A stretch of 64,000 bases of DNA from Ranitomeya imitator (GCF_032444005.1 NC_091290.1:133610001-133674000), one strand, 5' to 3'. Counted from the stretch's first letter, positions 1 to 61,309 are shown. Notes: generated by a model not told the origin, from the letters alone. Program-made: numbers and translations.

Positions 1-1673
1 GTAGGGGCTCCTGGTAGGGACAGATGTTAGAATGTAGGGGCTCCTGGTAGGGACAGATGCTAGAATGTAGGGGCTCCCGGTAGGGGGCAGATGCTAGAAT
101 GTAGGGGCTCCTGGTAGGGACAGATGCTAGAATGTAGGGGCTACTGGTAGGGACAGATGCTAGAATGTAGGGGCTCCCGGTAGGGATAGATGCTAGAATG
201 TAGGGTCTCCTGGTAGGGACAGATGTTAGAATGTAGGGGCTCCTGGTAGGGGACAGATGCTAGAATGTAGGGGCTCCTGGTAGGGACAGATGCTAGAATG
301 TAGGGGCTACTGGTAGGGGGCAGATGCTAGAATGTAGGGGCTCCTGGTAGGGACATATGCTAGAATGTAGGGGTTCCCGGTAGGGGCTCGTGGTAGGGGA
401 CACATGCTAGAATGTAGGGGCTCCTGGTAGGTACAGATGCTAGAATGTAGGGGCTCCTGGTAGGGGACAGATGCTAGAATGTAGGGGTTCCCGGTAGGGG
501 CTCGTGGTAGGGGACACATGCTAGAATGTAGGGGCTCCTGGTAGGGACAGATGCTAGAATGTAGGGGCTCCTGGTAGGGGACAGATGCTAGAATGTAGGG
601 GCTCCCGGTAGGGACAGATGCTAGAATGTAGGGGCTCCTGGTAGGGGACAGATGCTAGAATGTAGGGGCTCCAGGTAGGGACATTTGCTAGAATGTAGGG
701 GCTCCCGGTAGGGACAGATGCTAGAATGTAGGGGCTCCTGGTAGGGGACAGATGCTAGAATGTAGGGGCTCCCGCTAGGGTCAGATGCTAGAATGTAGGG
801 CCTCCTGGTAGGGGACAGATGCTAGAATGTAGAGGCTCCTGGAAGGGACAGATGCTAGAATGTAGGGGCTCCTGGTAGGGGACAGATGCTAGAATGTAGG
901 GGCTACTGGTAGGGGACAGATGCTAGAATGTAGGGGCTCCCGGTAGGGACAGATGCTAGAATGTAGTGGCTCCCGGTAGGGGCAGATGCTAGAATGTGGT
1001 GGCTCCTAGTAGGGACATTTGCTAGAATGTAGGGGCTCCCGGTAGGGGCAGATGCTAGAATGTAGGGGCTCCTGGTAGGGGACAGATGCTAGAATGTAGG
1101 GGCTCCTGGTAGGGGACAGATGCTAGAATGTAGGGGCTCCTGGTAGGGACAGATGCTAGAATGTAGGGGCTCCCGGTAGGGGACAGATGCTAGAATGTAG
1201 GGGCTCCCGGTAGGGGACAGATGCTAGAATGTAGGGGCTCCCGGTAAGGACAGATGCTAGAATGTAGGGGCTCCCGGTAGGGACAGATGCTAGAATGTAG
1301 GGGCTCCTGGTAGGGGACAGATGCTAGAATGTAGGGGCTCCTGGTAGGGACAGATGCTAGAATGTAGGGGCTCCTGGTAGGGACAGATGCTAGAATGTAG
1401 GGGCTCCTGGTAGGGTCAGATGCTAGAATGTAGGGGCTCCTGGTAGGGACAGATGCTAGAATGTAGGGGCTCCTGGTAGGGACAGATGCTAGAATGTAGG
1501 GGCTCCTGGTAGGGACAGATGCTAGAATGTAGGGGCTCCTGGTAGGGTCAGATGCTAGAATGTAGGGGCTCCTGGTAGGGACAGATGCTAGAATGTAGGG
1601 GCTCCTGGTAGGGACAGATGCTAGAATGTAGGGGCTCCTGGTAGGGGCAGATGCTAGAATGTAGGGGCTCCTG
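1..1673. repeat. Minisatellite, 30-31 bp unit (GTAGGGGCTCCTGGTAGGG(G)ACAGATGCTAGAAT), about 55 copies, runs off the window start
   Basis: Seen directly as near-identical tandem units; explains ORFs 307..519 and 1190..1687. Confidence 0.97.
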
Positions 1674-2053: not shown

Positions 2054-2143
2054 TTAACTCCCTCTGTAGGTGGTGTATGAGAACGGAGTCAGAAGGAGTG
2101 GCACGTGGTACTTCTGTTTTGGGTCCAAGATGGTGAAAACAAC
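2054..2143 (-). CDS. urah: urah exon 4 ([29 protein letters not shown])
   Basis: Acceptor ttttacag, phase 0, stop TAA at 2056-2054, YRGS signature. Confidence 0.96.
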
Positions 2144-5100
2144 CTGTAAAATAAGATGGAAATGTACACATCACAAAGGCATTGTATGTTCTCCATTACT
2201 GTCTTTAGTGATATACAGTTGTGCTCAAAAGTTTACATACCCCGGCAGAATTTTTGCTTTCTTTGCCTTTTTTCAGAGAATATGAATATCACCAAAACTT
2301 TTTCTCCACTCATGGTTAGTGGTTGGGTGAAGCCATTTATTGTCAAACTACTGTGTTTTCTCTTTTTAAATCAAAATGACAAACCAAAACATCCAAATGA
2401 CCCTGATCAAAAGTTCACATACCCTGGTGATTTTGGCCTGATAACATGCACAGACGTTGACACAAATGGGTTTGAATGGCTACTAAAGGTGACATCCTCA
2501 CCTGTGACCTGTTTGCTTGTAATCAGTGTGTGTGCATAAAAGCTGAGTGATTTTCTGGGATCCAGACAGACTCTTGCATCTTTCATCCAGCCACTGATGT
2601 TTCTGGATTGTGAGTCATGGGGAGATCAAATGAATTGTCAACGCATCTAAAGGAAAAGGTAGTTGAAATGTATAAAACAGGAAAGGGATACACAAAAATA
2701 TCCAAGGAATTGATAATGTCAGGCAGCAGCGTTCAAACTGTGATTAACAAATGAAAAATCAGGGTCTCTGTAAAAACAAAACTACGGTCAGGTAGACCAT
2801 CAAAAATGTCATCCACAACTGCCAGGAAAATTGTTCGGGATGCAAAGAAAAACCTACAAATAACATCAGCTGAAATACAGGACTCTGAAAACTAGCGGTA
2901 TGGCTGTTTCAAGGTGCACAATAAGGAGGCACTTGAAGAAAAATGGGCAGCATGGTTGAGTCGCCAGAAGATAGCAATTACTGCGTAAATGCCACAAAGT
3001 ATCTCGCCTACAATATGCAAAACAGCACAGAGACAAGCCTCAAAACTTCTGGAACAAGATGATTTGAAGTGATGAGACCAAAATTGAAATTTTTGGCCAC
3101 AACCATAAACGTTACATTTGGAGAAAGTTCAATAAGGCTTATGATGAAAGGAACACCATTCCTACTGTAAAGCATGGAGGTGGATTGCAGATGTTTTGGG
3201 GATGTGTGAGCTACAAAGGCACAGGAAACTAGGTCAAGGTTGAAGGAAAGATGAATTCAGCACTGTGTCAGCAAATACTGGAGGCAAATTTGCACTCATC
3301 AGCCCAGAAGCTGCGCATTGGTCATACTTGGACGTTCCAATATGACAACGATCCAAATCACAAGGCCAAGTCGACCTGTCATTGGCTACAGCAGAACACA
3401 GTGAAGGTTCTGGAGTGGCCATCTCAGTCTCCTGACCTCAATATCATTGAGCCACTCTGGAGAGATCTCAAGCGCGCAGTTCATGTCAGACAGCCCAGGA
3501 ATTTACAAGAACTGGAGGCGTTTTGCCAAGAAGAGTGGGCAGCTTTACCATCTGAGAAAATAAAGAACCTCATCCACAGCTACCACAAAAGACTTCAAGC
3601 TGTCATTGATGTTACAGGGGGTAATACACGGCATTAAGAAATAGGATATGTGAACTTTTGATCAGGGTCAATTGGATGTTTTGGGTTGTCATTATGATTT
3701 AAAAAGAGAAACCACAGTAGTTTGACAACAAATGGCTTCTTCCAACCACTAACCATGAGTGGAGAAAAAGTTTTGGTGAAAACATTCACACTCTCTGAAT
3801 AAAGGCCAAGAAAGCAAAAATTCTGCCGGGGTATGTACACTTTTGAGCTCAAATGTATAAGACCGGGTACTGATGAGTGAACAAGCCGCAATGCCCAGAC
3901 TGACCCAGACTTACAGCCTCGTATGTGACTATCAGGCTGTAAGACCCATGGTCACACTGGGCATTGTGGTCCTATCTGGGCTCTTAAATGTGCCCATCTG
4001 AACCCAGGCTAAGGGGGCCACCAGATGTGATAGAAGGGTCTTGAAAACTATCAATAGCACATAGGACCTGAAGGGCCCATGATACCCTCTGCCACATAGA
4101 AGACAGTAATATTATACGTTGCACATGCAGTGGGATAATTTGAAGCTCATGCCCCCAATGAAAACTTTCCAGCAATTATATAGGTCTTCTAATATGGGCC
4201 AAAACGACTTTCTGGGCCCCCCAAGGTTAAATGTTCCGGGGGTGACAACAGCCCATGTACCTATGGGCATATGATTTTGCTGATTTTGCATACGGTACCT
4301 CCACATAAGGGTAGAAACTGTCTTGCTGCAACTGTTTCCAGTAGTCCTTGGTGTCAAAACGTAACTGGAAAGTCCCAGCGGCAAGAGGTTCTCCTCGCAG
4401 GAGCCCTGGACAGCGGCCGTCCTCATTAGTGATGCTGGAGAAGAAAGATTAGGTTTACATTAACAAAAAATTATATTAAATACAACTTTTTCCATTTGCT
4501 CAAAGAAGAAAAAAAAAATCGTACCTGGATGTGATTTATATTGTGATAGTTACAAAAACATGGCTGCTTCCTTCCTACAACAGCGCTACAGCTGGTCACA
4601 GGTTGTGTTGGGTATTGCAGCTCTGTTCACTTTAAGAGAGCCGAGTTGTAATACCGATCACAACCCAAGGACAGGGGTGGCGCTCTCGCCGGGTGAAATC
4701 ATCCTTGTTTTTAAAATCCTGTTTTTTTTTATCCATATCATAATTTGCATTAAAATAAAAAAAATAGAATTTGTGGAATTTTCAGATCGTCCACTTGGGC
4801 TTTTTTTTGACTCCTCTATTGTTTCAAGAGACACCACATGTACATTAGCCACAGTAAACAAACAGCTATGTTTTGTATTGTAGCATCTAATGAGCGTGTG
4901 CAAAGGCCATTGTGAAGGGAGGGGAGCTGGGACATAGCCTATTGCGATTGCAATTCTTCCTCTGATGATAATGAGACTGCTGAAAACTCTTCCTGAAAGG
5001 ACTGGAAACCCGGGAGACAGTTGAGTACTCACCTTCTGCTCACTTGTACCCATTTTGTTTGGCGGGCATCCAGCTTGGACAGGGTGATGGTGAGCCCTTT

Positions 5101-5710
5101 GGCAGGAATCCCCTGCGCTGTGTTGAGGACATGTGTGCTCAGCAGGCTGTCACTGCCCCCCGACATGTCCTAAAAGATATGAAGATTTCTCGTTATTTCC
5201 TATTTATTAATACATTTGCGTGAGAATTCAGTGCGGAAAAAAAATGTGCAATCTGCTATGACTTTTTCAGCTTTGCAGTAGGGGAATTTCCTTTCCTGCA
5301 TTTTCCCCAGTTGCTAGTAAATAAGATTATATTAGGGAATCCCCTTTTAAGCAATTCCCTGAAATACAGTTGTAGGTTCGGAACCGGTTGTCCTGTCCCC
5401 TTAGTTTCTTTCTCACACCCATAGAGAGCAGCATGGCTTACAAGTCTTTTAGGGAGTTGCAATGTTAGCAATTCTTGTGCAGAACGTGCGTCGCTGCCTC
5501 TGCAGCCTGCCCTCCTCATATACCTACTTGTGCTGCAGATATTCAGCAGAAGAACTTCCTGCCGCCGGATGCCACCGACCTGCAGAAACGTGAGAGCACA
5601 TAGGAGGGTGTGATCCCATCATGCCCACAGAAGTGTCAGCACATGCGGCAGATCGTTACCTGCGTGCCCTGGAGGTGCTGCTGAATGAGCTGCAATCGCT
5701 TCCTGCTCAT
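2054..5710 (-). CDS. urah: 5-hydroxyisourate hydrolase (HIUase, transthyretin-like), 4 coding exons, 137 aa
   Basis: Exons 5710-5660, 5169-5033, 4434-4299 and 2143-2054, all GT-AG and in frame. Protein: [137 protein letters not shown]. Contains the HIUase signatures STHVLN, DGRC, YHVP and C-terminal YRGS. Confidence 0.97.
2216..3855 (+). mobile_element. Tc1/mariner DNA transposon, IR/DR type, degenerate transposase, in urah intron 3
   Basis: TA on both flanks (2214-2215, 3856-3857). TIRs of about 200 bp, each with two CAAAAGTT(T/C)ACATAC direct repeats. Transposase from ATG 2617 to 3637 with stops and frameshifts; motifs W(stop)[22 protein letters not shown]. Confidence 0.95.
4299..4434 (-). 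CDS. urah: urah exon 3 ([10 protein letters not shown]...FYPYVE)
   Basis: Acceptor ttctccag, donor gtaccg, 136 bp, contains the catalytic Arg in DGRC. Confidence 0.96.
5033..5169 (-). CDS. urah: urah exon 2 ([20 protein letters not shown]...)
   Basis: Acceptor cttttag, donor gtgagt, 137 bp, starts in phase 0, carries the catalytic His and a second in-frame Met. Confidence 0.96.
5660..5710 (-). CDS. urah: urah exon 1, peroxisomal PTS2 leader ([17 protein letters not shown])
   Basis: RLQLIQQHL fits the PTS2 consensus R-L-x5-H-L found in vertebrate HIUase leaders; donor gtaacg, phase 0. Confidence 0.9.
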
Positions 5711-6430
5711 AGTAAAGGATCCAGTGTTCTGAGCCGGGACCTTTGTACTGTAAAGCTCCTGTGCCCCAGGGGGGTCCTGGTTATCATTTACCAGCCTTGT
5801 TGTCCTGACGGATCACTGACCCCAAAGGCAATGAGTATTCTAGTATTCAGTGCCAGAAAAACATGGCTGATTCTTCCAATAACAGCGGCGCCGCTGCACC
5901 TGGTTGTGTGTGATTACCTATGAGTTTGGGATTATTCCGTCTGTACCTTATATAAGCTAATGGACCCCAAGCAAAAATGTGCTGTCAAATAAAATCCGAT
6001 CACACCGACCTTGTAGGATTTATTTTCTGCCATTGATGCAGACAGTAGATCTCCAGTTCTGGTAAACCTTTGTTCTTTGGCTGTAGTTTGATTAAAATAA
6101 TAATAAAAAGTCCTTTAGTCACCCTCCTCAGGTCCAACCCTGAGTCTCCGCTTCTGCTCAGGGTGTATGTTATGGTCGGTTTTAGCCCAAATAGCCAGAA
6201 CAAGACGCTCAGAGCTGATTGCCCAAAGCGCTATCGACATTACATCAGCGCTGTAGACAATACCAGACACCGGGAGCAGCAGTGGAGATCTGGGGAGGGC
6301 GAATAAAGCACAGTTCTATACTAATTGCTCCCAGAAACCAAAAACCTCCTTTAGCGTCGCCCCCCTCCCCCCCAAAAAAAAAATAAAAAAAAATCAGCAA
6401 ACCGTGGAGTCAATTTCAGGGATGACTTAC

Positions 6431-6538
6431 CTGGTCTCCTTCAGCCGGCAGCACAGAGATGGCAACACTACAAGTGGTACGGAGTCCGACCCCTTCCATA
6501 TCTGCAGCACTGACTGTTAGAACATAGTTATTGATTTT
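6431..6538 (-). CDS. Cadherin-like exon 8 ([36 protein letters not shown])
   Basis: Acceptor (T)9CAG, donor CAG|gtaagt. Aligns to the end of CDH1 EC2 (YTLVVQAADLQGEGLSTT) but lacks DxNDNPP. Confidence 0.88.
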
Positions 6539-9500
6539 CTGAAAAAAAAAACAAACATAAATCATTCATCACAACTGAGAACATTGGTACAAAAATACCG
6601 CAACCGAGCCCATGGAGAGGATGACCTCAGGGGTCCATGCCCACCTCCTAGCCCACGTCTCCATGCAGATCAAATGGTGTGTGACTTGTCCGCACCTTGC
6701 TGTATTCTCACTATTTCTGTTGCACAACACTTGCATTGTGATCCATGATGGCAAAAAATTGGATGTAACTTGCAACCAAAAAGTCAACAGTCGTGTTAGC
6801 TGTCAGGTCGTGTGTGGCACCAACCCCACTGGAAACTATTAGATGTAACATCACAATTGGACATCACAATCCTCTGGGACTTAAATCAATAAAATACAAG
6901 TTCAGCTGAATCTCTATATATAAACCTCTATAAGGAATTAACATGTATTTTGGCAGTAGCGTAACTAGGGCCCAATGGGCCCCAGTGCAAAATTTGTACC
7001 TGGGCCCCCACCTATATGTTGGTCAGATGTATAGGCCTTTGTAGTGTTCTAGATCCAATAAACACTTACAGTATGAGTTCACCCTCCATATAATAATGTC
7101 CCCCATCCTGTCACCTTCCTCTAATAATGTCCCTTATCTTAGACCCTTTCTGTAATGATGTTCCCCATCCTGGCCCCTTCCTGTACTAATGTCTCCCATC
7201 ATGTACAGATTCCTGTTATAATGTCCTCTGTCTTGGGCCCCTTTCTGTAATAATTCCCCACCCTATCCCCTTTCTGTAATAATGTTTCCCTTCCTGACCT
7301 CCATCCTGTAAAAATGTCCTCTGTCCTGGCCCCCATTCTGTAATAATGTCCTCCGTCCTGGCCCCCAGCCTCTAATAATGTCCCTCATCATGTGTCTCTT
7401 CCTGTTATAATGTCCTCCTTCCTGGCCACTATCCTGTAATAATGTTCCCCATCATGTGTCTCTTCCTGTATTAATGCCCCCCATCCTGGCCACTATCTGT
7501 AATAATGTCCTCCATCCTGGTCCCCAGCCTGTAATGTACCTTATCATGTGCCTCTTCCTGTTATAATGTCCCTTGTCCTGGTCCCCTTCCTGTAATAATG
7601 CCCCCCGTCTTGGCCACTATCTGTAATAATGTCCTCCTTCCTGGCCCCCATCCTGTAATAATGTCCCTCATCATGTGTCTCTTCCTGTTATAATGTCCTC
7701 CTTCCTGGCCCACATCCTGTAATAATGTTCCCCATCATGTGTCTCTTCCTGTATTAATGCCCCCCATCCTGGCCACTATCTGTAATAATGTCCTCCATCC
7801 TGGCCACTATCTGTAATAATGTCCTCCATCCTGGCCACTATCTGTAATAATGTCCTCCATCCTGGCCCCCATCCTGTAATAATATTCCCCATCATGTGTT
7901 CCTTTATGTAATAATGCCCCTGGCCACTATCTGTAATAGTGTCCTCTGTCCTGGCCCCCATCCTGTAATAATGTTCCCCATTTGTTGCTCCTTCCTGTTA
8001 TAATGTCCCTTATCCTGGGCTTCTTCCTGTTATAATTTCCCCCACTTTGGGCCCCATTCTGATACAATATCCCCCTTCCTGGTATAATGCACCCATTCTC
8101 AGTCCCTAGCAGTAACAATGTCCCCCGTCCTGGGCCCCTTCCTGGTATAATGACTCTGGTATAGATATAAATATTTAGGTTCAGCTCAACTTTGTTTTGT
8201 TAAGTTTATGGCAAAATCAATGGATCAAATTAATTTAGGAAGATGAAGAACAAACCTTGTAGCTTAGTCCGAGCTTGACCACGCTGATCAGCCCAGTTTT
8301 AGGATCAATACGAAATATATCGTTGGGCTCTTTTGGTGTCTGGTCAGTTATTGAATATTGTATTATCCCATTTGAGGTGAACTCAGTATCGTCCTCATCA
8401 GTCGCCAATACCTTCACCACGGACGTACCTATATCAGAGACACAATCAGAGTCCATACATAGAGCGTGCACCTTCTGCTCCACAGGGAAAACCTATATAA
8501 CACAATCACCGCAGTCACGCACATCATAATGCACAATTCCACCTGTTTTTGGAGGAGGAAATTGGCCATCTTAACTCTTGGACCCCCTGTGTGACCGTAC
8601 AGGTTGCACCAATGATATATCCGACCCTGGTCTAAAGAGATATGTAAGAATGCATCATGTGTATTGAATAGTCTCATGGCTGAGATGTACTGTTTATAAG
8701 CAAAGCCCTAAAAATGGACCTGGGAACAGCCAAAGGTGAGCAAGACAGTTTAATGTCACACATCATGACATGGCAAGACTGAGCAACACAACAACACACA
8801 AGGTAGTTACACTGCATCAGCAAGGTGTCTTCCTGCTCACAAAGCAGACTGGGGTTACAGGATGGGCTGTTTAAGTTCTGTTGAAGAAGCACCAAGAAAC
8901 AGGCAACGTTGAGGACAGTAGATGATGCGGTCGGCCAAGGAAACTTATTGCAGCAGGTGAAAGAAGCTTCATGATTACTTGCGTTCTAAATCAGAAGATG
9001 TCCAGCAGTGCCATCAGTTCAGAACTGACAGCGACCAGTGGGACACCGCTACATCCATCTACTGTTTGGAGTAGTCTGCCCAGAAGTGACCGTCATGGAA
9101 GACGTGGCCAAAAAGAACAGATTTTCCATATGGGAACATGGACAAGCAACTCAACTATGCATGAAAATATAGGAGTTCATTAACTATTTTCAAGTGACAA
9201 GTATCGAAATGACAACACCAAATATTGATTTTTCCTTTGCTGATTCACTTTGCATTTTGTCAATTGCTAAAAATAAACAAAAACTTCTAGTTTTGAACTC
9301 ATTCATTTTTTCCACACCTGCCTGAAACTTTTGCACAATACGATACGTCTCAAGAATGGCTTAAAATTTTAAGGAATAGTGATTTGAAAAAAAATCTAGA
9401 AAAATGGAAATAACCCTTTATAAGGCGTGTGATTTAATGGTATATCTAACACAAAACATGACACTTACCGGGTAAAGCATCCTCCTTTACTCCTCCATCA

Positions 9501-12500
9501 TATCGTGCCTGTGTGAACACCGGCTTGTTGTCATTCTGGTCTGAAATATTAATGACGATTTCAACAGGATCTTCCAAAGTTTGTCCCGACTCTGAAATAG
9601 CAGATACTTTAATCTGTAATCATAAATGTTTATATGAATTACGGTAATATCGTGTCGTCATTTGAAATAACGATAAAGATTCTTGCACAGAAATCAGTGT
9701 AAAATGTAAAGTGGAGACGTGGTTTGGGATGAAATGTTCTGCCCTCCTGCACAGCCCCTCATTTTATGTCCCCCTTGCACAGCCCACAATCCCCTCATTT
9801 TATGCCCTCCAGCAACCTCTCACAGTCCCTCAGTTCATGGTCAAGTAATATAGGAATTAAAGAAAAAAAAAAACCCTTATATTCGCCTAATCCAGGCTCC
9901 TTGTCCACTGTCTCCTCTCCTGTCCTGAATAGCAGTGGGCGCTTGATGGCATGATGACATCACTGAACGGCACCATCCAATGTCCTGTGTGTGCGCCTTC
10001 TCCAACAGGGTGCAGGCTGGAAATGGCCTACATCTTGCTGGAGGTCTTGGCAGAGCAGAAGGCTGACTACAGCTCCTCTGCCGGGGAGTGATTTCTGGAG
10101 CACAGACTGAGAGAGCATGTGCCTGCGCACCGACCATAACTGTGCTGAATGCCTGCGGCTGGAGGAAGGCGTCGGGTGGCCGAAGGCATTCTTTTTTTTT
10201 TTTTTTTCAAAGGGCGCCCTCCTCAGGTAGGCAAGAGGTAGCACCCTAGTCAAGTGCCTAACTTGTCTACCCCTTGTCTCGGCCCTGCCAAACTTACATA
10301 GTGTTTTTTTATTACTTAAGAGTCAAAAGNNNNNNNNNNNNNNNNNNNNNNNNNNNNNNNNNNNNNNNNNNNNNNNNNNNNNNNNNNNNNNNNNNNNNNN
10401 NNNNNNNNNNNNNNNNNNNNNNNNNNNNNNNNNNNNNNNNNNNNNNNNNNNNNNNNNTATAATTTGTGTCGCCATTTTCCTGTATTTTTATTTTATGCAT
10501 ATTTTTTCATTGATGGAGCGGTGTGATAACGCCATCATAGTCAATAGAATTGCCACCCCCTCCAAACTGTGGCAATTAAGAGCTTGTCGTGGGCACAGCT
10601 GTAAGGGGGTACAGAAGTACACCCTATCTGGTGGAAGCAGGATGAAAAATGGCACTTCGGATTTTTGCATTGAAGCCTGGTAACTCTAAGGCTACGTTCA
10701 CACTAGCGTTGTGTGCCGCTGCGTCGGCGACGCAACGCACAACGCACGCAAAAACGCGGCAAAACGCACGCAAAAACGCTGCGTTTTGCAACGCATGCGT
10801 CGTTTTTTGCCGAAAATCGGACGCAATAAAAATGCAACTTGTTGCGTTTTCTTGGTCCGACGCTTGCGGCAAAAAAGACGCATGCGTCGCACAACGCAAC
10901 AAACAAAAACGCATGCGTCCCCCATGTTAAATATAGGGGCGCATGACGCGTGCGTCGCCGCTGCGTCGCCCGACGTTAACCCGACGCACACTAGCATAAC
11001 GCTAGTGTGAACGTAGCCTTAGCTACACCTTTCGTGCCCCCTAATAATAATACAGCAGGGACTACAGAGAGGCCGTGTACTTACATTGTACTTAGCAATG
11101 TATTCCCTGTCCAGGGGTTTGGTCACCCACAGCCAACCAGTACTGTCCACAGTAAATACCCCAATGGGATCTGAATCAGCCCCGGTGCCGGATATTCTGT
11201 AAAAGACTTTCCCAGTAGAGTCCACATTTGATTTCACCTATAGAGAAGGCAAAATAAAAGTACGTGAAAAATCAATGGTTATAGGAGGTAGAAGTTGTAT
11301 TTGACTATATCTAATCATAGTTATTCATCTCCCATTGGACATTTTGTCTATTAGCAAAATGTATAAACTTTCAGCTCTCTGCAATAAATGTTCATATCTC
11401 AACACAACTAATATTACTCTCAGAATTATTCACCCCGTGTTCTGGGGCTGCTTTGCTGCATCTGGCACAAGGTGTCTACAATCTGTGCAGGGTACAATGA
11501 AATCTCAAGACTATCAAGGGATTCTAGGGAGAAATGTGCTGCCCAGTGTCAGAAAGCTTGGTCTCAGTCTCAGGTCATGGGTCTTGCAACAGGATAATGA
11601 CCCAAAACACACAGCTAAAAACACCCAAGAATGGCTAAGAGGAAACATTGGACTATTCTGAAGTGGCCATCATAGAGCCCTGACCTAAATCCTATTGAGC
11701 ATCTTTGGAAAGAGCTGAAACATGGCGTCTGGAAAAGGCAACCTTCAAACACGAGACAACTGGAGCAGTTTGCTCTTGAGGAGTGGCCAAAATACCTGTC
11801 GAGAGGAGCAGAAGTCTCATTGACTGTTACAGGAACCGTTTGATTTCAGTGATTGCTCAAAAGGTTGTGTGACAAAATGTTAAGTTAAGGTACCATCATT
11901 TCTGTCCAGGCCTATTTCATGAGTTTCAACACTTGTGCCATTAGTTGTGCATATTTTTTACCCATTTTTGATGGATGTACATAGGCTGGAATAGCAGAGT
12001 CTATCTACCGATCTTATAGATGCCGTACCTGGAAAAATCGCTTTGGATACGGACCCCGCTCATTCTCAGTTATGTAGACTGGCGGTAAAACATAAGCTCT
12101 TTTCTTTCTTCTCAGGAGAAGACTTGTTTTCTCAATATCCTTATTTCCATCAGAAGACTGGGCCTGTGAACCACAAATATAGTTGATAAAGTCAAGTGGT
12201 TCTTACGATACTTTCAGCTACTTACATTTAAGTGAAGGGACGGAGCATATTTTCCGAGACATCGTTCAGTTTCCACATAAGGGCACCGCTGTACAGATTG
12301 GATGAAGCCAATTTCCCCCCAAATTTGTTTTATTTTCCATAGGAGGGCTCCTCACCTTTGTCAGATACATTGTTAGGACTTCTTCAGGTTAAAGTGTATC
12401 TCCCCTTTAAATCGTGAAGTCTTGTGAATTAGGATCTGTCACATTCACGCACTAGTGTATCCCATCACAGACTCAGTTTTTCGGATTGTCTCCGATGGCG

Positions 12501-15500
12501 TTTACTCCTGTTTTGGTCAAAAACTATACAGACCAGAACCAGCAATGAGACCAGCCATCTCAGGACCGAGTATGGAGCGCCAGGCAAGGGTTTATTTGGC
12601 TTTACTCAGTTAAAGAGAGTCGAGTTGTGAGTCAAATTCAGAGTCAAGTGCTGGCGGAGTTCAGTCAGAGGAAGTGCTAGACAGTGACAGCATTTGACAA
12701 GCAGCGGCAAAGTCGTCCTGTCCATGCCAAGTCTCCCAACAGTATGACGACAAATGTGAGGCTTCGTGCAGATCCCCGGGCAGTCATGGGCCTAGGTCCC
12801 GGAAAAGGCATTGAGTGCCATGTCTCTGTCTCCCCTGTGAGAAAGATGTCGGCCGGGTCTCAGCGAGGGAAGGATGGTGGGCCTCAGGGAAGCCAGATAG
12901 GAGGTCCCTGGTACCAACAGGAGCTGTTTAGGTTGGGGGGAGGTCGGGCAGAACAGAGTCAAGGACTGATAGTACACTGGACAAAGGGAACATCATCCAG
13001 AGGGGATTCTGCCGCACTCTGTGCGCCGCAACCGCAAGTATCTGAATTGCACAGTTAAATTGAATTGGTTTAACTAGACCTAAGGTCTCCTGTCATGTCT
13101 GCAGATGTATCTGGTCCCATGGATGAGGAGGTAATAGGGACTCCCGAACAACAAGTGAGTAAAGAAAGCACATCACGCTCAACTCTGATTCCTGCTTAGA
13201 AGAGGGATATCAGAGTAAAGAGAACTCTGTTCTGGCTCATCGCAACCGACCCTGTGCGCCCTTCATAGGGATACATCACTCTCCCCCACACGCTGGAAGC
13301 AGTAGTGCCCTCTCTGGCATGACACGCTCACACATCAGCCTCCTCTCGTGTGGCCAATCTTGCGCATGGTCGCTATATTCTTACCCCTTACAGGTTCCCC
13401 CTCAACTAATGGCGGCACTCTTGTTCAGGTGGGCTGATCTCCTTCACCAGGGTAACACTTCACACACTACTGCTCCGACTTAAGCGCTTTCTTGCTCCTG
13501 TGCAGCCATATCTACACCATATTATTATAAGCAGTAAAAAAAAAGCCAGTTCTGTTATGTTAATATATTGCTAACCATAAATAATAGGTTTACTCGACCG
13601 CACATGAATCAGACACTGCTTGCGTGACTGCAGCCAGCTGTGACTGTCAGGTCTCTTACTACACATATACAGTTGTGTGAAAAAGTCTCTGCCCCCTTCC
13701 TGATTTCCTATTCTTTTGCAATGTTTGACATACTTAAGTGTTTCAGATCAACAAACAAATATAAATATTAGACAAAGATAACATAACAAAATGCAGTTTT
13801 TATAAGAAGGTCTTTATTATTAAGCAAGAAAGAAATCCAAACCTACAGGGTCCTGTATGATTCCAGTTTCTCTCATACACAGCCATGTAGCCTGTGGATC
13901 GTTGTTAATAGTTGCTGCCTTCCATGCCACAGGTACTAGGTTTGAATCCCGGCAAAGGGGAAGCTCTAAGAAAAAGTAGATCTAGGCCACCTGGGTGCCA
14001 AAGTCTCAGAAGGGCCCCCCATGTCATCTGTACCGACCAGTAACACTCATTCCCCTACAACAGATTGTAGGCGCACAGTAATTTTATGAACATGTGAGAG
14101 GGCACATGCCAAGCATGATATGAGGTCTATGCACAAATGTCTGATTTATGGATTTAGGGAAAATATGTTTTTTTGGTGATGTTTTTTTTACGGAAAAAAT
14201 AAATAGAAATAAAACACTCTGCCATATAAAACAATTCATTTATTCATACAAATGGTAGAAGATCAGAAAAAGTAAGTAACCGCCAGGTAGACAAGTTAGA
14301 ACCTTCCAAAAGACTGATCCACCGCCTGATAGTTTAGAAGAAACAAAGACAAAAAAACAATTTAATGCTTAGCCATAAATGTGAAAAAAACAAACAAACA
14401 AACAAACAAAAACTTCCAAGACATCCAAGGCTGTTAGTTTAGTGATCACCGCTGGGATTAGACCATTATAACCCGTTTCTCCTCCTACTGCCTGCATTTA
14501 CCACCAGGGGGAGCTCACTGTATATAGATGTAAATAGCTACGACTGACATAATAACTGTCTTCACTCAGCTCCCTCTAGTGGTGACAGTAGGAATCCACA
14601 ACTACTGTATTTTTCGGACCATAAGACGCACCCCAAATTTTGGGGTGAAAAATAGCAGAAAAAAAGATTTTTATAAGATGGGGGTCATCTTATTGTCCGA
14701 ATTTAAGGTATCTTACCTGAGAGACGGCGGTGGTATAGCAGGGTCACAGAAGGCAGGATCCCTTCCTCAGGAAGCCAGCAGCGGCAGAAGTGGGGCAATG
14801 CTGCAGTCCCGGGGTGCGATGCTGTGGGTCCGGTGTCGGTGGTGAGGCAGAACTGAAGCAGGGACCCACCCTCAGGATGCCGGCAGCAGAAATCTGGCGG
14901 CGCAGCGGCCCGGTGTCCACGGTGAGAAGAGTGCATCACCGGTTTCTCTGCAGCCATCTTCCTGAAGCCGTGGGCCGCCGGAGGCTTCAGGAAAATGGCC
15001 GCCGGAAGCCACGCGTGCGCAGATTAAGATCTCAGCGGCCATTTTCCTGAAGCCTCCGTCGGCCCACGGCTTCGGGAAGATGGTCGCAGGGAAACTGGTG
15101 ATGCACTCTGCTCACCGTGGACACCGGGCCGCAGCGCCACCACATTTCTGCCGCTGGCATCCTGAAGAAAGGACCCTGCTCACCTGCACTCCACACCGCC
15201 CACCACCGCAGCATCGCCACACCTCTGCTACAACCCCCGGTAAGCCTGCGTCCGCACTATAAGATGCACCCCCCAATTTCCTCCCAAATTTTTTTGGGGA
15301 AAAAAGTGCATCTTATAGTCTGAAAAATACGGTATATAATTATTTTTTTCTACTTTACTCCTGTATAAAACCTTACAATTATATTTATACTATACAGCAA
15401 CCATCATGGAATTTGGAACCTAGTATGAGATGGTGGGTAAAACTTTACAGCTTTACAATACCTGCTGTTCTCTTTCATTCCATAAGATAATGGGCACAGA

Positions 15501-16877
15501 GTGTCGCGTTCCTTTGGCATCCCATGCATTCAATACAAAACTGACAGCTCCGTCGTGGAGGGTGATCTGCCTCTTCACCGCAACTTTACCATCGGGAAAC
15601 ACCCTGAAGCGGGTGTCTTCAGGCGAGTACAGCGCCCGGTTATTAACGGAGCAGGATGTAAAGGTCACTAAAAACGATAAAAACATTTTATTAACACAAG
15701 GCTGAAATAATTGAATATGTTTTCATAATGTACAGTCTACGTCACAACCATGAAGCACCATTTGTGCCTCTGTATAATGAGAAGACCCCCTTCTGTGCCT
15801 CCTATTATGAATACATCCCCCTTTGTGCTTGGCTCCAAGCGATAATGCCCCATATAATAATTCCAACCCCTTTTGCGCCTCTATATGGTAATATCGCCCT
15901 CTTTTCGCCCCTATATAATAATTATGGTCCTTTTGTGTCAATTTAAAAAAAAATGCAAATCCGTTAAGTGGTCCGCAAGTCTCAGCATTTTCTCTCCGTC
16001 TTTGGAGAACTCTGGAATGTGGGCGATTTCCTTCTGAGGTTTCTATGGAATTTATTAGTGGGATGCCAGGATTTACGTTACTTATGGGGGCACAGTATAT
16101 CCTTCCAATAAAGTGATGGAGCGTGGTACAGATGGGCAAAACGATTTTCCATTTCTAGTTCTGCCCTCTATGTCTTTACTTGTGCCCAGGAGGACGGCTG
16201 CAGCTTCATCTTGGTGCCCAAAACATGCCGGGCCAAGGATACCGGCCACGGAACGGAGGTCCGGCTGCAACGTCTGACCGGATGTGTGAATGTGGTCTTA
16301 TGTATAGGGTCCTGGGAGTTTCCAGCACTAGAAATAGCTTATTTAATAGACGGCGGAGTTTTCTAGACCACCCAATGGGATACATTACCGTTATCCTACT
16401 ATGGCTGATAACAGAGAACAACAGACTGAACGTAAAGCATTTTACTGGGACTTTAATAAAGGGGCCAGCACTTAGGACCGCCACAAAGCCCTCACTTTGT
16501 GCTATGGGAGCACCCTAAAAACTGGTACCTTTTCCAACAGCTCGGCCTCTCTCCAGGATCTTACGGGGCACAGTAAAAGCGTAGCGTTGCTCACTGAAGC
16601 CGGGCACACATTGTTCCAGGTCCTCCAAGACCACCAGGGACACCTGCAAAATAAATTAAAACACCGTTTGATATGCAACTTTGACAGTTGCACTGGCTTT
16701 GCATGCATGCTGCAACTTGTAGTCCCACCCCGGCTAGATGACAGGCGATGCTTTCATACTGTCCCAACTACAGATATCGGTTGTATGCCTAATATAAATC
16801 CGTAAGCCCCTCTTCTACCCACATAATGTATTTACCTTTACTAGGAGGATTAGTAACGCCGGGTACATCAACCTCAT
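6431..16877 (-). CDS. Truncated type I classical cadherin (CDH1/CDH3/EP-cadherin-like): signal peptide, prodomain, EC1, EC2; at least 359 aa; 3' end unresolved
   Basis: Exons 16877-16836 (42 bp), 16643-16529 (115), 15667-15462 (206), 12163-12029 (135), 11237-11085 (153), 9613-9469 (145), 8428-8256 (173) and 6538-6431 (108). All GT-AG, summing to 1077 bp without a stop, with phases matching CDH1 exons 1-8. Motifs: C-x-PGF, LERGR, RRKKR furin site, LDRE, DQNDNKP, ATDEDD. Confidence 0.92.
7085..8152. repeat. Degenerate minisatellite, about 30-33 bp unit (CCTGTAATAATGTCCTCCATCCTGGCCCC-like), in cadherin intron 7
   Basis: Tandem variants seen directly, with higher-order alternation of unit types. 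Confidence 0.9.
8256..8428 (-). CDS. Cadherin-like exon 7 ([14 protein letters not shown]...[15 protein letters not shown])
   Basis: Phase 1 in, phase 0 out; homologous to CDH1 exon 7 (EC2). Confidence 0.93.
8640..9340 (+). mobile_element. Internally deleted Tc1-like fragment
   Basis: Remnant GRPRKL-type paired-domain coding sequence near 8930-9100 and a Tc1-like terminal region near 9230-9340. Confidence 0.45.
9469..9613 (-). CDS. Cadherin-like exon 6 ([33 protein letters not shown]...)
   Basis: 145 bp, same size as CDH1 exon 6; DQNDNKP present; HAV position reads SAI. Confidence 0.95.
10330..10457. other. Assembly gap (N run)
   Basis: Run of N bases. Confidence 1.
10690..11018. mobile_element. 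Palindromic MITE (GGCTACGTTCACACTAGCG...CGCTAGTGTGAACGTAGCC)
   Basis: Perfect terminal inverted repeats of about 20 bp flanked by TAA/TTA, with an internally palindromic GACGCA-rich body. Superfamily (Kolobok/T2 or Harbinger) not resolved. Confidence 0.85.
11085..11237 (-). CDS. Cadherin-like exon 5 ([21 protein letters not shown]...[11 protein letters not shown])
   Basis: 153 bp, phase 0/0; EC1 core with GAD and LDRE motifs. Confidence 0.96.
11430..11930 (+). mobile_element. Tc1 transposase 3' fragment
   Basis: FWGCFAASG...QQDNDPKHT...[11 protein letters not shown], frameshifted and 5'-truncated. Confidence 0.9.
12029..12163 (-). CDS. Cadherin-like exon 4 (…LRRKKR|[23 protein letters not shown])
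   Basis: 135 bp, phase 0/0. Furin site followed by a mature N-terminus AYVLPP instead of DWVIPP. Confidence 0.95.
13669..13860. mobile_element. Tc1 terminal fragment
   Basis: TA|CAGTTGTGTGAAAAAG start typical of Tc1 TIRs; no partner end found. Confidence 0.55.
14605..15332. mobile_element. Non-autonomous TA-flanked DNA transposon (pogo/Tc2-like MITE) with an internal hairpin of about 150 bp arms
   Basis: TIRs CTGTATTTTTCGGACCATAAGACGCAC / GTGCATCTTATAGTCTGAAAAATACGG; TA flanks; inverted duplication at about 14850-15190. Confidence 0.85.
15462..15667 (-). CDS. Cadherin-like exon 3 (prodomain)
   Basis: [38 protein letters not shown]...FVLNAWD matches the type I cadherin prodomain. Confidence 0.95.
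16529..16643 (-). CDS. Cadherin-like exon 2 ([38 protein letters not shown])
   Basis: 115 bp, same size as CDH1 exon 2; CxPGF and LERGR motifs. Confidence 0.95.
16836..16877 (-). CDS. Cadherin-like first coding exon, signal peptide ([14 protein letters not shown])
   Basis: Hydrophobic leader, donor AAG|gtaaat in phase 0. A possible upstream acceptor at 17043-17044 would make 16878-17042 a 5' UTR. Confidence 0.8.
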
Positions 16878-17469
16878 TGTTCCACAGTTTGCCAGAGTTC
16901 TTGTTTACTGCAGCTTTTGGGTAAAGTGAGAAAGTCCAGTGAGTCTATCCCTCCTCCTCCTCACACTGGACGTAGTCACCATCGCCTCCAGCGGAGTAAG
17001 CATTTCCAGATGTGTAGAAAAGCAGAGATACCCATGTAGAGCCTGAAAAAGACAAGTACAGTTGTGGCCAAAAATATTGACACCCCTGCAATTCTGTCAA
17101 TAATACTCAGTTTCTTCCTGAAAATGATTGCAAACACAAATTCTTTGTTATTATTATCTTCATTTAATTTGTCTTAAATGAAAAAACACAAAAGAGAATG
17201 AAGCAAAAAGCAAAACATTGATTATTTCACACAAAACTCCAAAAATGGGCCAGACAAAAGTATTGGCACCCTCAGCCTAATACTTGGTTGCACAACCTTT
17301 AGCCAAAATAACTGCGACCAACCGCTTCCAGTAACCATCAACGAGTTTATTACAATGCTCTGCTGGAATTTTAGACCATTCTTCTTTGGCAAACTGCTCC
17401 AGGTCCCTGATATTTGAAGGTGCCTTCTCCAAACTGCCATTTTTAGATCTCTCCACAGGTGATCTATGG

Positions 17470-18787
<1,318 letters not shown>

Positions 18788-61137: not shown

Positions 61138-61302
61138 NNNNNNNNNNNNNNNNNNNNNNNNNNNNNNNNNNNNNNNNNNNNNNNNNNNNNNNNNNNNNNN
61201 NNNNNNNNNNNNNNNNNNNNNNNNNNNNNNNNNNNNNNNNNNNNNNNNNNNNNNNNNNNNNNNNNNNNNNNNNNNNNNNNNNNNNNNNNNNNNNNNNNNN
61301 NN
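61138..61302. other. Assembly gap (N run)
   Basis: Run of N bases. Confidence 1.
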
Positions 61303-61309
61303 ACCGGCC

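What the first reader, a model, noticed from the sequence alone, without database searches (positions are those of the whole stretch)
2054..16877. Possible secreted cadherin-HIUase fusion: EC1-EC2 arms on a transthyretin-like tetramer
Seen: the last cadherin exon ends in phase 0 at a strong donor (GAC CAG|gtaagt, 6431). urah exon 2, only 1.26 kb downstream on the same strand, begins in phase 0 (GAC ATG TCG). Splicing 6431 to 5169 skips the PTS2 exon and gives one open frame of about 479 aa: signal, prodomain, furin site, EC1, EC2, a linker [14 protein letters not shown], and a complete HIUase ending in YRGS. No convincing homologous cadherin exon 9 or TM exon lies in between. Known: HIUase is a homotetramer, and transthyretin arose from a HIUase duplicate rerouted to secretion. 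Inference: a read-through isoform would be a secreted tetravalent cadherin, or an extracellular purine-catabolic enzyme tethered by cadherin domains. I know of no description of such a protein. Phase compatibility alone does not show that the splice is used.
Basis: partly seen in the sequence, partly recalled or inferred. Interest (0 to 1): 0.9.

Follow-up and report, generated by a model that had tools for sequence, protein, structure and literature searches.

The report
Real, expressed cadherin–HIUase fusion gene
In this frog locus the first eight exons of a cadherin really are spliced onto the uric-acid-pathway enzyme HIUase, and the same probably secreted fusion is annotated from coelacanth to birds but is missing from the papers I could search.

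Summary
On the minus strand, eight GT-AG cadherin exons (16877-6431, 359 aa: signal, prodomain, RKKR furin site, EC1, EC2) lie 0.7 kb upstream of an intact four-exon urah (5710-2054). RNA contigs from four runs in two studies join 6431 to 5169 exactly, at depth 125-622. The PTS2 exon and the skipped stretch have depth 0-8. One 1355-nt contig runs from urah exon 4 through cadherin exon 8 and then 924 nt further, starting in exon 7.

The spliced 479-aa product is identical to RefSeq "EP-cadherin-like" of Ranitomeya imitator. The N gap lies in intron 5 and hides no exon.

Cadherin+HIUase proteins are annotated at the same locus (next to GAS8) in coelacanths, salamanders, many frogs, turtles, squamates, over 30 birds, echidna and some carnivores. 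Ranid cDNA contigs carry the whole ORF. Papers I could search, including an October 2026 HIUase review, never mention cadherin. The coelacanth form was called a lineage-specific testis "HIUase B".

Secretion, furin processing, tetramer formation and function are inferred, not shown. EC1 evolves unusually fast in poison frogs. The scan had noted only the cadherin part of this stretch before, in this same genome; nothing on other DNA.

The parts
16836..16877 (-). Fusion gene exon 1: start codon and signal peptide ([14 protein letters not shown])
   Evidence: Spliced model. It is the only hydrophobic segment of the protein (Kyte-Doolittle 2.1 at residues 3-21). Helix 4-21 in the AF2 model.
16529..16643 (-). 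Exon 2: start of the cadherin prodomain
   Evidence: Pfam Cadherin_pro, E=1.4e-4, 22.4 bits, just under the 23-bit cut-off for this 38-aa piece. 115 nt, the length I recall for CDH1 exon 2 (from memory).
15462..15667 (-). Exon 3: rest of the cadherin prodomain, ends in phase 0
   Evidence: Pfam Cadherin_pro E=2.4e-12. 91% identical to Anomaloglossus. pLDDT about 90.
12029..12163 (-). Exon 4: disordered pro-linker, furin site RRKKR (residues 139-143), mature N-terminus [18 protein letters not shown]
   Evidence: pLDDT under 50 at residues 126-143.
11085..11237 (-). Exon 5: core of EC1 (contains LDRE)
   Evidence: Pfam Cadherin 1.8e-7. Best PDB matches are Cadherin-1 and Cadherin-3, E about 5e-16.
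10330..10457 (.). Assembly gap (N), inside intron 5, non-coding
9469..9613 (-). Exon 6: end of EC1, calcium-binding linker DQNDNKPVF, start of EC2
   Evidence: tblastn hit to Cadherin-1.
8256..8428 (-). Exon 7: EC2 (ATDEDD ...), ends in phase 0
   Evidence: Pfam Cadherin 2.8e-7. Best PDB match Cadherin-3, 1.3e-13. Its 3' end appears as the loose end at 6540 in all four RNA runs.
6431..6538 (-). Exon 8: last strand of EC2 and the decayed EC2-EC3 linker ([10 protein letters not shown]). Its donor is spliced to urah exon 2.
   Evidence: Joint 5168|6430, skipping 1261 nt with GT..AG on the minus strand, in 4 of 4 runs at depth 622, 566, 446 and 125.
5660..5710 (-). Alternative first coding exon of urah: PTS2 peroxisomal signal ([17 protein letters not shown]). 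The fusion mRNA skips it.
   Evidence: RNA depth 0-1.4 in the four runs laid.
5033..5169 (-). urah exon 2, shared: linker DMSGGSDS and the start of HIUase (LSTHVLN, catalytic His)
   Evidence: Pfam PF00576. Joints to cadherin exon 8 and to urah exon 3.
4299..4434 (-). urah exon 3, shared: HIUase core ([10 protein letters not shown])
   Evidence: Pfam PF00576 4.5e-10. Joint 4434|5033 in 4 of 4 runs.
2054..2143 (-). urah exon 4, shared: YHVPLLL ... YRGS, then stop
   Evidence: Pfam PF00576 3.5e-10. The loose end at 4297 in the RNA contigs matches its first bases.

Best explanation
This is one compound gene with two 5' modules, not two neighbouring genes.

A distal promoter upstream of 16877 drives exons 1-8. 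These are the remains of a CDH1/CDH3-type classical cadherin cut off after EC2. Exon 8 is spliced in frame to urah exon 2, skipping the PTS2 exon. The mRNA encodes a 479-aa precursor: signal peptide, cadherin prodomain, furin site RKKR, EC1, EC2, a flexible 10-15-residue linker, and a complete HIUase ending in YRGS. A proximal promoter with the PTS2 exon (5710-5660) would give the ordinary 137-aa peroxisomal HIUase from the same last three exons.

Shown here:
- the exon structure and the open frame;
- the splice, and its dominance in four RNA runs;
- identity to a RefSeq model;
- the same architecture at the same locus from coelacanth to birds;
- conserved HIUase catalytic residues and conserved EC1-EC2 calcium-site residues;
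- no transmembrane segment.

Inferred from what is established for these families:
- The protein enters the secretory pathway, loses its prodomain to furin and is released, because it has no membrane anchor.
- It assembles through the HIUase domain into the homotetramer typical of the HIUase/transthyretin family, so it would display four EC1-EC2 arms.

What the arms bind, and whether the HIUase part works outside the cell as an enzyme or only as a tetramer scaffold, is open. In this species canonical strand-swap adhesion is unlikely, because Trp2 is Tyr and HAV is SAI.
For: Splice: joint 5168|6430 (GT..AG on the minus strand, 1261 nt skipped) in runs X9, X10 and X1 (study P1) and X5 (study P2), at contig depth 622, 566, 446 and 125. 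The skipped stretch has depth 0-8 and the PTS2 exon 0-1.4. In X1 one 1355-nt contig covers urah exon 4, exon 3, exon 2 and cadherin exon 8, then continues for 924 nt that begin with the end of exon 7.

Frame and domains.

Independent model: the spliced protein equals P0066, XP_069595133.1 of Ranitomeya imitator, 479 of 479 residues.

Orthologues carrying Cadherin plus Transthyretin Pfam domains: coelacanths, salamanders, more than 12 frogs, turtles, squamates, more than 30 birds, echidna and carnivores.

cDNA-sized Logan contigs (1478-1567 nt) from three ranid runs carry the uninterrupted 464-codon fusion ORF.

Same neighbourhood: GAS8 lies directly downstream in Anomaloglossus, Phyllobates and the bird Willisornis. 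This leaves no room for cadherin exons 9 onward.

Purifying selection: window against ranid cDNA gives dN/dS of about 0.28 for EC1-EC2 and 0.17 for HIUase, with dS saturated.

HIUase part: aligns end to end with zebrafish HIUase 2H1X, E=5e-39. The active-site residues as I recall them are kept: H372 and H463 are invariant and R412 nearly so across 33 fusions, and the C-terminus is YRGS.

Fold: AF2 gives confident prodomain, EC1, EC2 and HIUase domains, joined by low-confidence linkers at 126-143 and 357-365.

Topology: the only hydrophobic stretch is the N-terminal one, and there is a single furin motif.
Against: No protein-level evidence exists here.

The runs were chosen because they hold words from these stretches (exons 7-8, or exon 8 through urah exon 2), so the dominance of the fusion says nothing about liver or other tissues. 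Their tissue of origin is hidden.

The runs are Logan contigs labelled 'RNA?'. Contigs drop rare variants, so a minor PTS2 or truncated form may exist.

Short-read contigs do not prove that exon 1 and urah exon 4 sit on one molecule.

In Ranitomeya the canonical adhesive residues are lost, and EC1 diverges very fast among poison frogs: 65% identity to Dendrobates, against 98% for the prodomain and 95% for HIUase. That could mean the arms are decaying.

Many orthologue models are automatic predictions. Some are clearly messy, for example the Lissotriton model of 1138 aa with a duplicated block, and the long forms in meerkat, gecko and swift.
Confidence: 0.85

Rival explanations
1. The HIUase domain is the point and the cadherin part is only a delivery module. 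The distal exons serve to route HIUase into the secretory pathway, giving an extracellular enzyme that clears 5-hydroxyisourate formed when urate is oxidised outside cells. The EC domains would be vestigial or a loose tether.
For: The catalytic residues and YRGS are intact. Trp2 and HAV are lost in this species, and EC1 evolves fast. An isoform in Gastrophryne joins the signal and prodomain directly to HIUase with no EC domains (P0005). Depth differences in X9 and X10 suggest that a second donor also feeds urah exon 2 here.
Against: The HIUase exons are shared with the peroxisomal form in frogs, so their conservation proves nothing about the secreted form. The EC1-EC2 calcium-site residues (ENE, LDRE, DQNDN) stay invariant or nearly so over the long span from coelacanth to birds, and dN/dS is about 0.28. 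That is not expected for a mere spacer.
Confidence: 0.3
2. The cadherin arms are the point and HIUase is only a tetramer scaffold, as in transthyretin. The product would be a soluble multivalent cadherin ligand that binds or blocks classical cadherins or another partner, perhaps in reproduction. Fast evolution of EC1 would reflect diversifying selection.
For: EC1 is hypervariable between close relatives while its flanks are nearly frozen. The coelacanth long form is reported as the testis isoform (PMC4764851). The one bird locus examined has no PTS2-like motif before urah exon 2. Several squamates and turtles have YRGN or YKGS in place of YRGS. Sauropsids lack Urad and liver uricase yet keep Urah (PMC10517255).
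Against: No binding data exist. Trp2 is lost in several frogs. Without codon data, fast evolution cannot be told apart from relaxed constraint. Frogs keep all the catalytic residues.
Confidence: 0.3
3. The joined RNA is real but is a non-functional conjoined or read-through transcript, little translated or degraded, and the many database models only copy this noise.
For: Adjacent same-strand genes often give read-through chimeras. Most orthologue entries are automatic models.
Against: The fusion is the dominant product of exon 8, not a minor one. The cadherin part has no terminal exon of its own and no EC3-cytoplasmic exons. The frame across the junction is kept from coelacanth to birds, even though exon 8 and the linker have diverged. 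There is no premature stop, and dN/dS is below 1.
Confidence: 0.05
4. The junction is an artefact: a chimeric assembly in the Logan contigs or a mis-joined genome assembly.
For: The contigs come from short reads, and the window has gaps and many repeats.
Against: The joint sits exactly on GT..AG exon borders in four runs from two studies. It matches a RefSeq model. It is seen in a second R. imitator assembly and in R. variabilis, each 479 aa, and in ranid cDNA contigs.
Confidence: 0.01

Closest known systems
5-hydroxyisourate hydrolase (Urah/HIUase), peroxisomal, e.g. zebrafish 2H1X
   Same: The last 114 residues align end to end (E=5e-39) with the catalytic His, Arg, His and the C-terminal YRGS. 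The same three exons also serve a PTS2 form at this locus.
   Different: The known enzyme is a protein of about 120-140 aa sent to peroxisomes or the cytosol. Here it carries a 359-aa N-terminal secretory cadherin module in place of the PTS2 exon.
Transthyretin (TTR)
   Same: Same fold and family (PF00576). It is a secreted homotetramer that arose from HIUase by replacing the first exon with a signal-peptide exon. From memory of the human map, TTR lies just downstream of a cadherin gene (DSG2) on the same strand. PMC7672937 lists DSG2, DSC2 and DSC3 among the loci surrounding TTR.
   Different: TTR lost YRGS and the catalytic residues and binds thyroid hormone. This protein keeps all the enzyme residues and gains its signal peptide through eight cadherin exons.
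Classical type I cadherins CDH1/CDH3 (E-, P-, EP/C-, B-cadherin)
   Same: Best PDB matches for EC1 and EC2. Same prodomain, furin site, exon lengths and phases for exons 2-7 (compared with CDH1 from memory), and the same EC1-EC2 calcium site.
   Different: Only two EC repeats, and no transmembrane or catenin-binding domain. In this species Trp2 is Tyr and HAV is SAI. The EC2-EC3 linker DxNDN has decayed to LPAEGDQ.
Latimeria 'HIUase B' (Forconi et al. 2014, as cited in PMC4764851 and PMC4324301)
   Same: An orthologous architecture: 497 aa with Cadherin_pro, Cadherin and Transthyretin domains (P0067). It is the only member with a paper behind it, where it is reported as the testis isoform.
   Different: It was interpreted as a coelacanth-specific HIUase gene duplicate. 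The data here show one widespread architecture at the Urah locus of tetrapods as well. I could not read the original paper, so I do not know whether it noted the cadherin domains.
Urah-Urad fusions (allantoin synthase) of plants, diatoms and bacteria, and periplasmic bacterial TLPs
   Same: Other natural cases where HIUase is fused to another domain or re-routed by a different N-terminal signal (PMC13751858, PMC4324301).
   Different: In those cases the partner is the next enzyme of the pathway or a plain signal peptide, never an adhesion module.

Membership tests
HIUase / transthyretin-like protein family (PF00576) | Sequence match to the family over the full domain | tested here: met
   Pfam hits on all three exons. 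Residues 366-479 align to zebrafish HIUase 2H1X positions 7-119, E=5e-39.
HIUase / transthyretin-like protein family (PF00576) | Active-site residues as I recall them from the HIUase literature: His in THVLN, Arg in DGR, His in YHVP, and the C-terminal YRGS | tested here: met
   All are present. H372 and H463 are invariant, and R412 is conserved in 90% or more of 33 fusions. The C-terminus is YRGS.
HIUase / transthyretin-like protein family (PF00576) | Homotetramer and hydrolysis of 5-hydroxyisourate | not testable with these tools
   Only a monomer model was made.
Classical type I cadherin | Signal peptide, prodomain and furin site before EC1 | tested here: met
   Cadherin_pro on exons 2-3. 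RKKR at residues 140-143, followed by xYVLPP.
Classical type I cadherin | Five EC repeats, a transmembrane helix and a catenin-binding tail (PF01049) | tested here: not met
   Only EC1 and EC2 are present. tblastn with 743-1046-aa cadherins finds nothing beyond exon 8. GAS8 follows directly in relatives. No second hydrophobic segment.
Classical type I cadherin | Trp2 strand-swap residue and the HAV motif in EC1 | tested here: not met
   Tyr2 and SAI in this species. Trp2 is kept in most orthologues.
Classical type I cadherin | Calcium-binding residues at the EC1-EC2 junction (xENE, LDRE, DQNDN, DxD) | tested here: met
   TENE, LDRE, DQNDN and DEDD are present. E154, N155, D209 and R210 are invariant across 33 fusions, and D242, N244, D245, N246, D276 and D278 are conserved in 90% or more.
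Transthyretin proper | Loss of YRGS and the catalytic residues; hormone-binding channel | tested here: not met
   YRGS and the catalytic residues are retained. HIUases score far better than TTRs (1e-39 against 1e-15).
Conjoined / read-through transcript of two independent genes | The upstream gene has its own terminal exon, and the chimera is a minor product | tested here: not met
   Depth after the exon 8 donor is 0.5-8, against 480-620 on exon 8. No other 3' end was seen. No further cadherin exons were found.

The most novel reading that the evidence does not exclude
The Urah locus of sarcopterygians encodes an unrecognised secreted protein class: a furin-processed cadherin EC1-EC2 module displayed on an HIUase tetramer. 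Three readings would follow.

- In birds and reptiles, which lack Urad and liver uricase, this secreted form may be the reason Urah is kept. The one bird locus examined has no PTS2-like exon.
- In poison frogs its EC1 may be under diversifying selection as a recognition surface.
- The same-strand arrangement of a cadherin gene followed by an HIUase-family gene is mirrored by DSG2 followed by TTR. An ancestral cadherin-HIUase read-through may therefore have been the route by which the transthyretin lineage first reached the secretory pathway.
Probability: 0.3. Interest if true: 0.9.

Novelty: new variant of a known kind. Interest (0 to 1): 0.8.

Why it matters
HIUase and transthyretin are a textbook case of an enzyme turning into a secreted carrier, and cadherins are the textbook adhesion molecules. 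A natural, conserved and well-expressed protein that joins the two has not been discussed in any paper I could search. An October 2026 review of HIUase evolution and fusions never mentions cadherin.

If the protein is secreted and tetrameric, it would be a new kind of soluble multivalent cadherin. It would also be a second, independent case of an HIUase-family protein sent outside the cell.

It offers a concrete hypothesis for two open puzzles. One is why uricotelic birds and reptiles keep an intact, liver-expressed Urah without Urad or liver uricase (PMC10517255). The other is how the transthyretin ancestor acquired secretion.

It also corrects two records. Dozens of RefSeq entries are named 'cadherin-1-like', 'EP-cadherin-like' or 'blastomere cadherin-like'. 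The coelacanth 'HIUase B' was read as a lineage-specific duplicate.

All of this can be tested with ordinary expression and biochemical assays.

Tried and rejected
- Looked for cadherin exons 9-16 in the window with tblastn of four long cadherins. None were found, and 1-1673 is a tandem repeat. This rejects the idea that urah is nested in an intron of a full-length cadherin. It is also excluded by GAS8 lying 0.3-1 kb downstream in relatives.
- Considered a truncated cadherin ending by read-through of the exon 8 donor (DQVSHP, then stop) with a poly(A) signal near 6020. RNA depth there is only 2-7, so it is at most a trace form or unspliced precursor.
- Tried a tree of EC1-EC2 to test for a single origin. 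It was uninformative, because I had no tetrapod CDH1/CDH3 references and support was low. A Lissotriton 'B-cadherin-like' model clusters with the Ambystoma fusion. Gene conversion with, or model merging of, neighbouring cadherins therefore cannot be excluded.
- Tried codon-level selection tests. The three ranid cDNA contigs are nearly identical (dS about 0.01), and the comparison of window against ranid is saturated. No DNA was served for Anomaloglossus, Dendrobates or Phyllobates.
- Could not fetch a TTR locus to test the DSG2-TTR adjacency with the tools, so it rests on memory plus PMC7672937.
- The Forconi 2014 paper is not held.
- The bacterial promoter/terminator scan is irrelevant to a frog gene.
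As a result, the exon 7-8 junction is seen only as a loose end.

Full report
**What is in the sequence**

Both genes lie on the minus strand. Eight exons with AG/GT borders give a 359-aa open frame: 16877-16836, 16643-16529, 15667-15462, 12163-12029, 11237-11085, 9613-9469, 8428-8256 and 6538-6431. Its parts are a hydrophobic signal, a cadherin prodomain, a furin site RRKKR, EC1, the calcium linker DQNDNKPVF, and EC2. It ends ...[11 protein letters not shown] at a gtaagt donor in phase 0.

Pfam finds Cadherin_pro on exons 2-3 and Cadherin on exons 5, 7 and 8. The best solved relatives are Cadherin-1, Cadherin-3 and Xenopus EP-cadherin.

About 0.7 kb further on, an intact urah has four exons: 5710-5660 ([17 protein letters not shown], a PTS2 signal of the R-L-x5-H-L type), 5169-5033, 4434-4299 and 2143-2054 (ending YRGS). 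Joining 6431 to 5169 keeps the frame and gives 479 aa.

Full-length cadherins used as tblastn queries find no EC3-EC5, membrane or cytoplasmic exon anywhere in the window. Positions 1-1673 are a 33-bp tandem array.

**The assembly gap**

The N run at 10330-10457 lies within intron 5. Three results show that no exon is hidden there.
- The exon 5/6 junction (KYN|IKV) aligns without a gap to 19 orthologues.
- The spliced protein is identical to an independent 479-aa model.
- An RNA contig continues 924 nt upstream of exon 8. Exons 7 to 3 plus 112 nt of exon 2 add up to the same length. Only its first 30 letters were shown, and they match exon 7.

**Is the splice used?**

This was the decisive test. 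I laid Logan contigs of four runs on 4200-7050. The runs were X9, X10 and X1 from one study and X5 from another. They had been found because they hold words from 6431-8428 (exons 7-8) or 5033-6538 (exon 8 through urah exon 2).

- All four show a joint between 5168 and 6430 that skips 1261 nt with CT..AC ends, which is GT..AG on the coding strand. Contig depths are 622, 566, 446 and 125.
- All four also show the urah exon 2-3 joint (4434|5033).
- The loose end at 6540 is the end of cadherin exon 7. The loose end at 4297 is the start of urah exon 4.
- In X1 a single 1355-nt contig carries urah exon 4, exon 3, exon 2 and cadherin exon 8, then runs on for 924 nt that begin with the end of exon 7.
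- The skipped stretch has depth 0-8, and the PTS2 exon 0-1.4.
- No joint from 5660 to 5169 was reported.

In these samples, therefore, almost every exon 8 goes to urah exon 2, and almost every urah exon 2 comes from the cadherin module.

Caveats:
- The runs were picked because they hold words from these stretches.
- Their tissue is hidden.
- Contigs drop rare forms.
- The label 'RNA?' is a guess, though spliced contigs at depths in the hundreds over near-empty introns can only be cDNA.
- In X9 and X10 the exon 2-3 contig is deeper (916, 885) than the exon 8/exon 2 contig. The latter also stops 27 nt into exon 3. A second donor therefore probably feeds urah exon 2 as well. Exons 3 and 7 both end in phase 0, and both such isoforms are annotated in other frogs.

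**Independent support**

A search with the prodomain exon against 1.8 billion proteins returned short 'cadherins' that end in HIUase. My spliced protein is 479/479 identical to XP_069595133.1, 'EP-cadherin-like' of Ranitomeya imitator. A second assembly of that species and R. variabilis also give 479 aa. The window is thus most probably R. imitator.

I then searched with only the HIUase part while restricting candidates to long proteins, and with the whole protein. These searches found Cadherin plus Transthyretin architectures in:
- two coelacanths;
- Ambystoma and Lissotriton;
- Dendrobates, Phyllobates, Anomaloglossus, Rhinoderma, Bufo, Rana, Aquarana, Lithobates, Pelobates and Bombina;
- turtles, lizards and snakes;
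- more than 30 birds;
- echidna, meerkat, fox and wolverine.

No ray-finned fish with this architecture appeared among the listed hits. The sensitivity of the search is limited.

Three ranid Logan contigs of 1478-1567 nt hold the uninterrupted 464-codon ORF, which is cDNA evidence in another family.

The neighbourhood is shared. GAS8 lies 0.3-1 kb downstream in Willisornis, Anomaloglossus and Phyllobates. Two full-length cadherins lie upstream in the bird, and NUP210L lies head to head in Phyllobates.

**What the protein looks like**

AF2, run with 33 orthologues, gives confident prodomain, EC1, EC2 and HIUase domains. They are linked by low-confidence stretches at 126-143 (the furin region) and 357-365 (the linker PAEGDQDMS), like beads on a string. 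The only hydrophobic segment is the signal, there is one furin motif, and there is no anchor.

The HIUase part aligns end to end with zebrafish HIUase (E=5e-39) and keeps the residues I recall as catalytic. The two His are invariant and the Arg nearly so across 33 fusions, and the C-terminus is YRGS. The EC1-EC2 calcium-site residues are invariant or nearly so.

The EC2-EC3 linker survives only as vestiges: DINDN in Ambystoma, DANDS in quail, DPNDE in Bombina and LPAEGDQ here. This fits an origin by truncation of a five-repeat cadherin after exon 8. Amniote forms have lost the prodomain but keep the signal, a short propeptide and RQKR|DW.

**How it probably works**

The gene is best read as one locus with two 5' modules.
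- The PTS2 exon would send HIUase to peroxisomes.
- The eight-exon cadherin module would send it into the secretory pathway, where furin would remove the prodomain.

HIUase and transthyretin family members are homotetramers (established knowledge). The secreted product should therefore carry four EC1-EC2 arms on a compact core. Secretion, processing and tetramer formation are inferences.

Whether the core acts as an enzyme outside cells or only as a scaffold, and what the arms bind, cannot be decided here. I give the two readings about equal weight. In Ranitomeya, canonical strand-swap adhesion is unlikely, because Trp2 is Tyr and HAV is SAI.

**An unexpected pattern**

Among poison frogs the prodomain and HIUase are almost frozen while EC1 is hypervariable. 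Identity to the R. imitator protein:

| Compared with | Prodomain | EC1 | EC2 | HIUase |
|---|---|---|---|---|
| D. tinctorius | 98% | 65% | 84% | 95% |
| R. variabilis | 98% | 91% | 90% | 95% |

Between the two Ranitomeya species, 20 of the 30 differences fall in EC1-EC2, and several are radical. Over the long span to ranids, dN/dS is about 0.28 for EC1-EC2 and 0.17 for HIUase, with saturated dS. The arms are therefore constrained overall, but in this clade they are either relaxed or under diversifying selection. Codon data were not obtainable.

**Literature**

- Full-text searches for HIUase or urah together with cadherin returned only gene lists.
- An October 2026 review of HIUase evolution uses 'fusion' 52 times and 'cadherin' never.
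- A 2015 transthyretin-evolution review sorts TLPs into cytosolic, periplasmic and peroxisomal groups only.
- The coelacanth long form was deposited as 'HIUase B'. It is described as a coelacanth-specific duplicate with liver and testis isoforms (PMC4764851). The original paper is not held.
- Work on sauropsid uricase notes that Urah stays highly expressed in liver while Urad is absent. It does not mention a cadherin part (PMC10517255).
- In the one bird locus I read, the 1.1-kb intron before urah exon 2 has no PTS2-like motif. An upstream in-frame MSPCTFTLILLLVG looks like a signal peptide.

**Verdict**

The exact protein is already present in RefSeq under a misleading name, so the sequence itself is not new. 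The architecture, its breadth, its dominance in RNA and its implications appear to be undescribed.

I rate it a new variant of known kinds (HIUase/transthyretin family and classical cadherin) and of high interest.

The link to the origin of transthyretin secretion is speculative. It rests on DSG2 lying just upstream of TTR on the same strand, which I state from memory. PMC7672937 lists DSG2 among the loci surrounding TTR.

Noticed in passing
window 144-353 of the protein (exons 4-8, 12163-6431): EC1 is hypervariable among poison frogs: 65% identity to Dendrobates, against 98% for the prodomain and 95% for HIUase. Between R. imitator and R. variabilis, 20 of the 30 differences fall in EC1-EC2. 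Residue 2 of the mature protein is Tyr, Trp, Ile, Arg or Leu in different frogs.
   Followed up: partly
window 5169 acceptor; runs X9 and X10: The urah exon 2-3 contig is about 300 depth units deeper than the cadherin exon 8/urah exon 2 contig, and the latter ends 27 nt into cadherin exon 3. A second donor probably also splices to urah exon 2. It could be exon 3, giving a prodomain-HIUase protein as in Gastrophryne P0005, or exon 7, as in Anomaloglossus P0061.
   Followed up: no
L001 11070-12170 (Willisornis vidua): No PTS2-like motif in any forward frame of the intron before urah exon 2. An in-frame upstream MSPCTFTLILLLVG in L001 looks like the true signal peptide, which the annotated start misses.
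   Followed up: partly
P0076, P0163, P0165, P0167, P0169, P0170, P0157, P0156: Several squamate and turtle fusions end in YRGN or YKGS rather than the HIUase signature YRGS. This hints at loss of catalysis in some sauropsids.
   Followed up: no
window 61290-61490, + strand: An exon-like stretch encodes the start of another cadherin prodomain (ACQPGFSSNEYIIAVDRRELKKDRKLG), just after a short N run. A second classical cadherin gene, on the opposite strand to the fusion gene, seems to begin near the right end of the window.
   Followed up: partly
window 1-1673 and 7091-8044: Two long minisatellites. One is a 33-bp unit repeated about 50 times, just downstream of the urah 3' end. The other is a 32-bp unit repeated about 30 times, filling most of cadherin intron 7.
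   Followed up: partly
window about 2240-3900 (urah intron 3); also about 11440-11900 and 17080-17500: Sequences that read like Tc1/mariner-type transposon remnants. The one in urah intron 3 has long terminal inverted repeats. This was judged by eye only.
   Followed up: no
window about 14620-15340 (intron 3) and 10720-11030 (intron 5): Foldback elements with long inverted repeat ends, seen while reading the sequence.
   Followed up: no
window 6509: A>G on the + strand in runs X9 and X10, but not in X1 or X5. It is the third base of a Ser codon in exon 8 (AGT to AGC), so it is a synonymous polymorphism.
   Followed up: yes
P0045 (Lissotriton, 1138 aa); P0161, P0170, P0176, P0268, P0269, P0273: Some models carry a duplicated EC1-EC2 block, or three to four EC repeats, before HIUase. 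These are either real longer forms or merges with neighbouring cadherin genes. The Lissotriton full-length B-cadherin-like EC1-EC2 clusters with the Ambystoma fusion.
   Followed up: partly
P0002, P0004, P0006, P0062, P0064: Short isoforms of 123-130 aa holding only the prodomain are annotated in Dendropsophus, Xenopus laevis and Pelobates fuscus. The prodomain is also unusually conserved in poison frogs, so it may have a role of its own.
   Followed up: no
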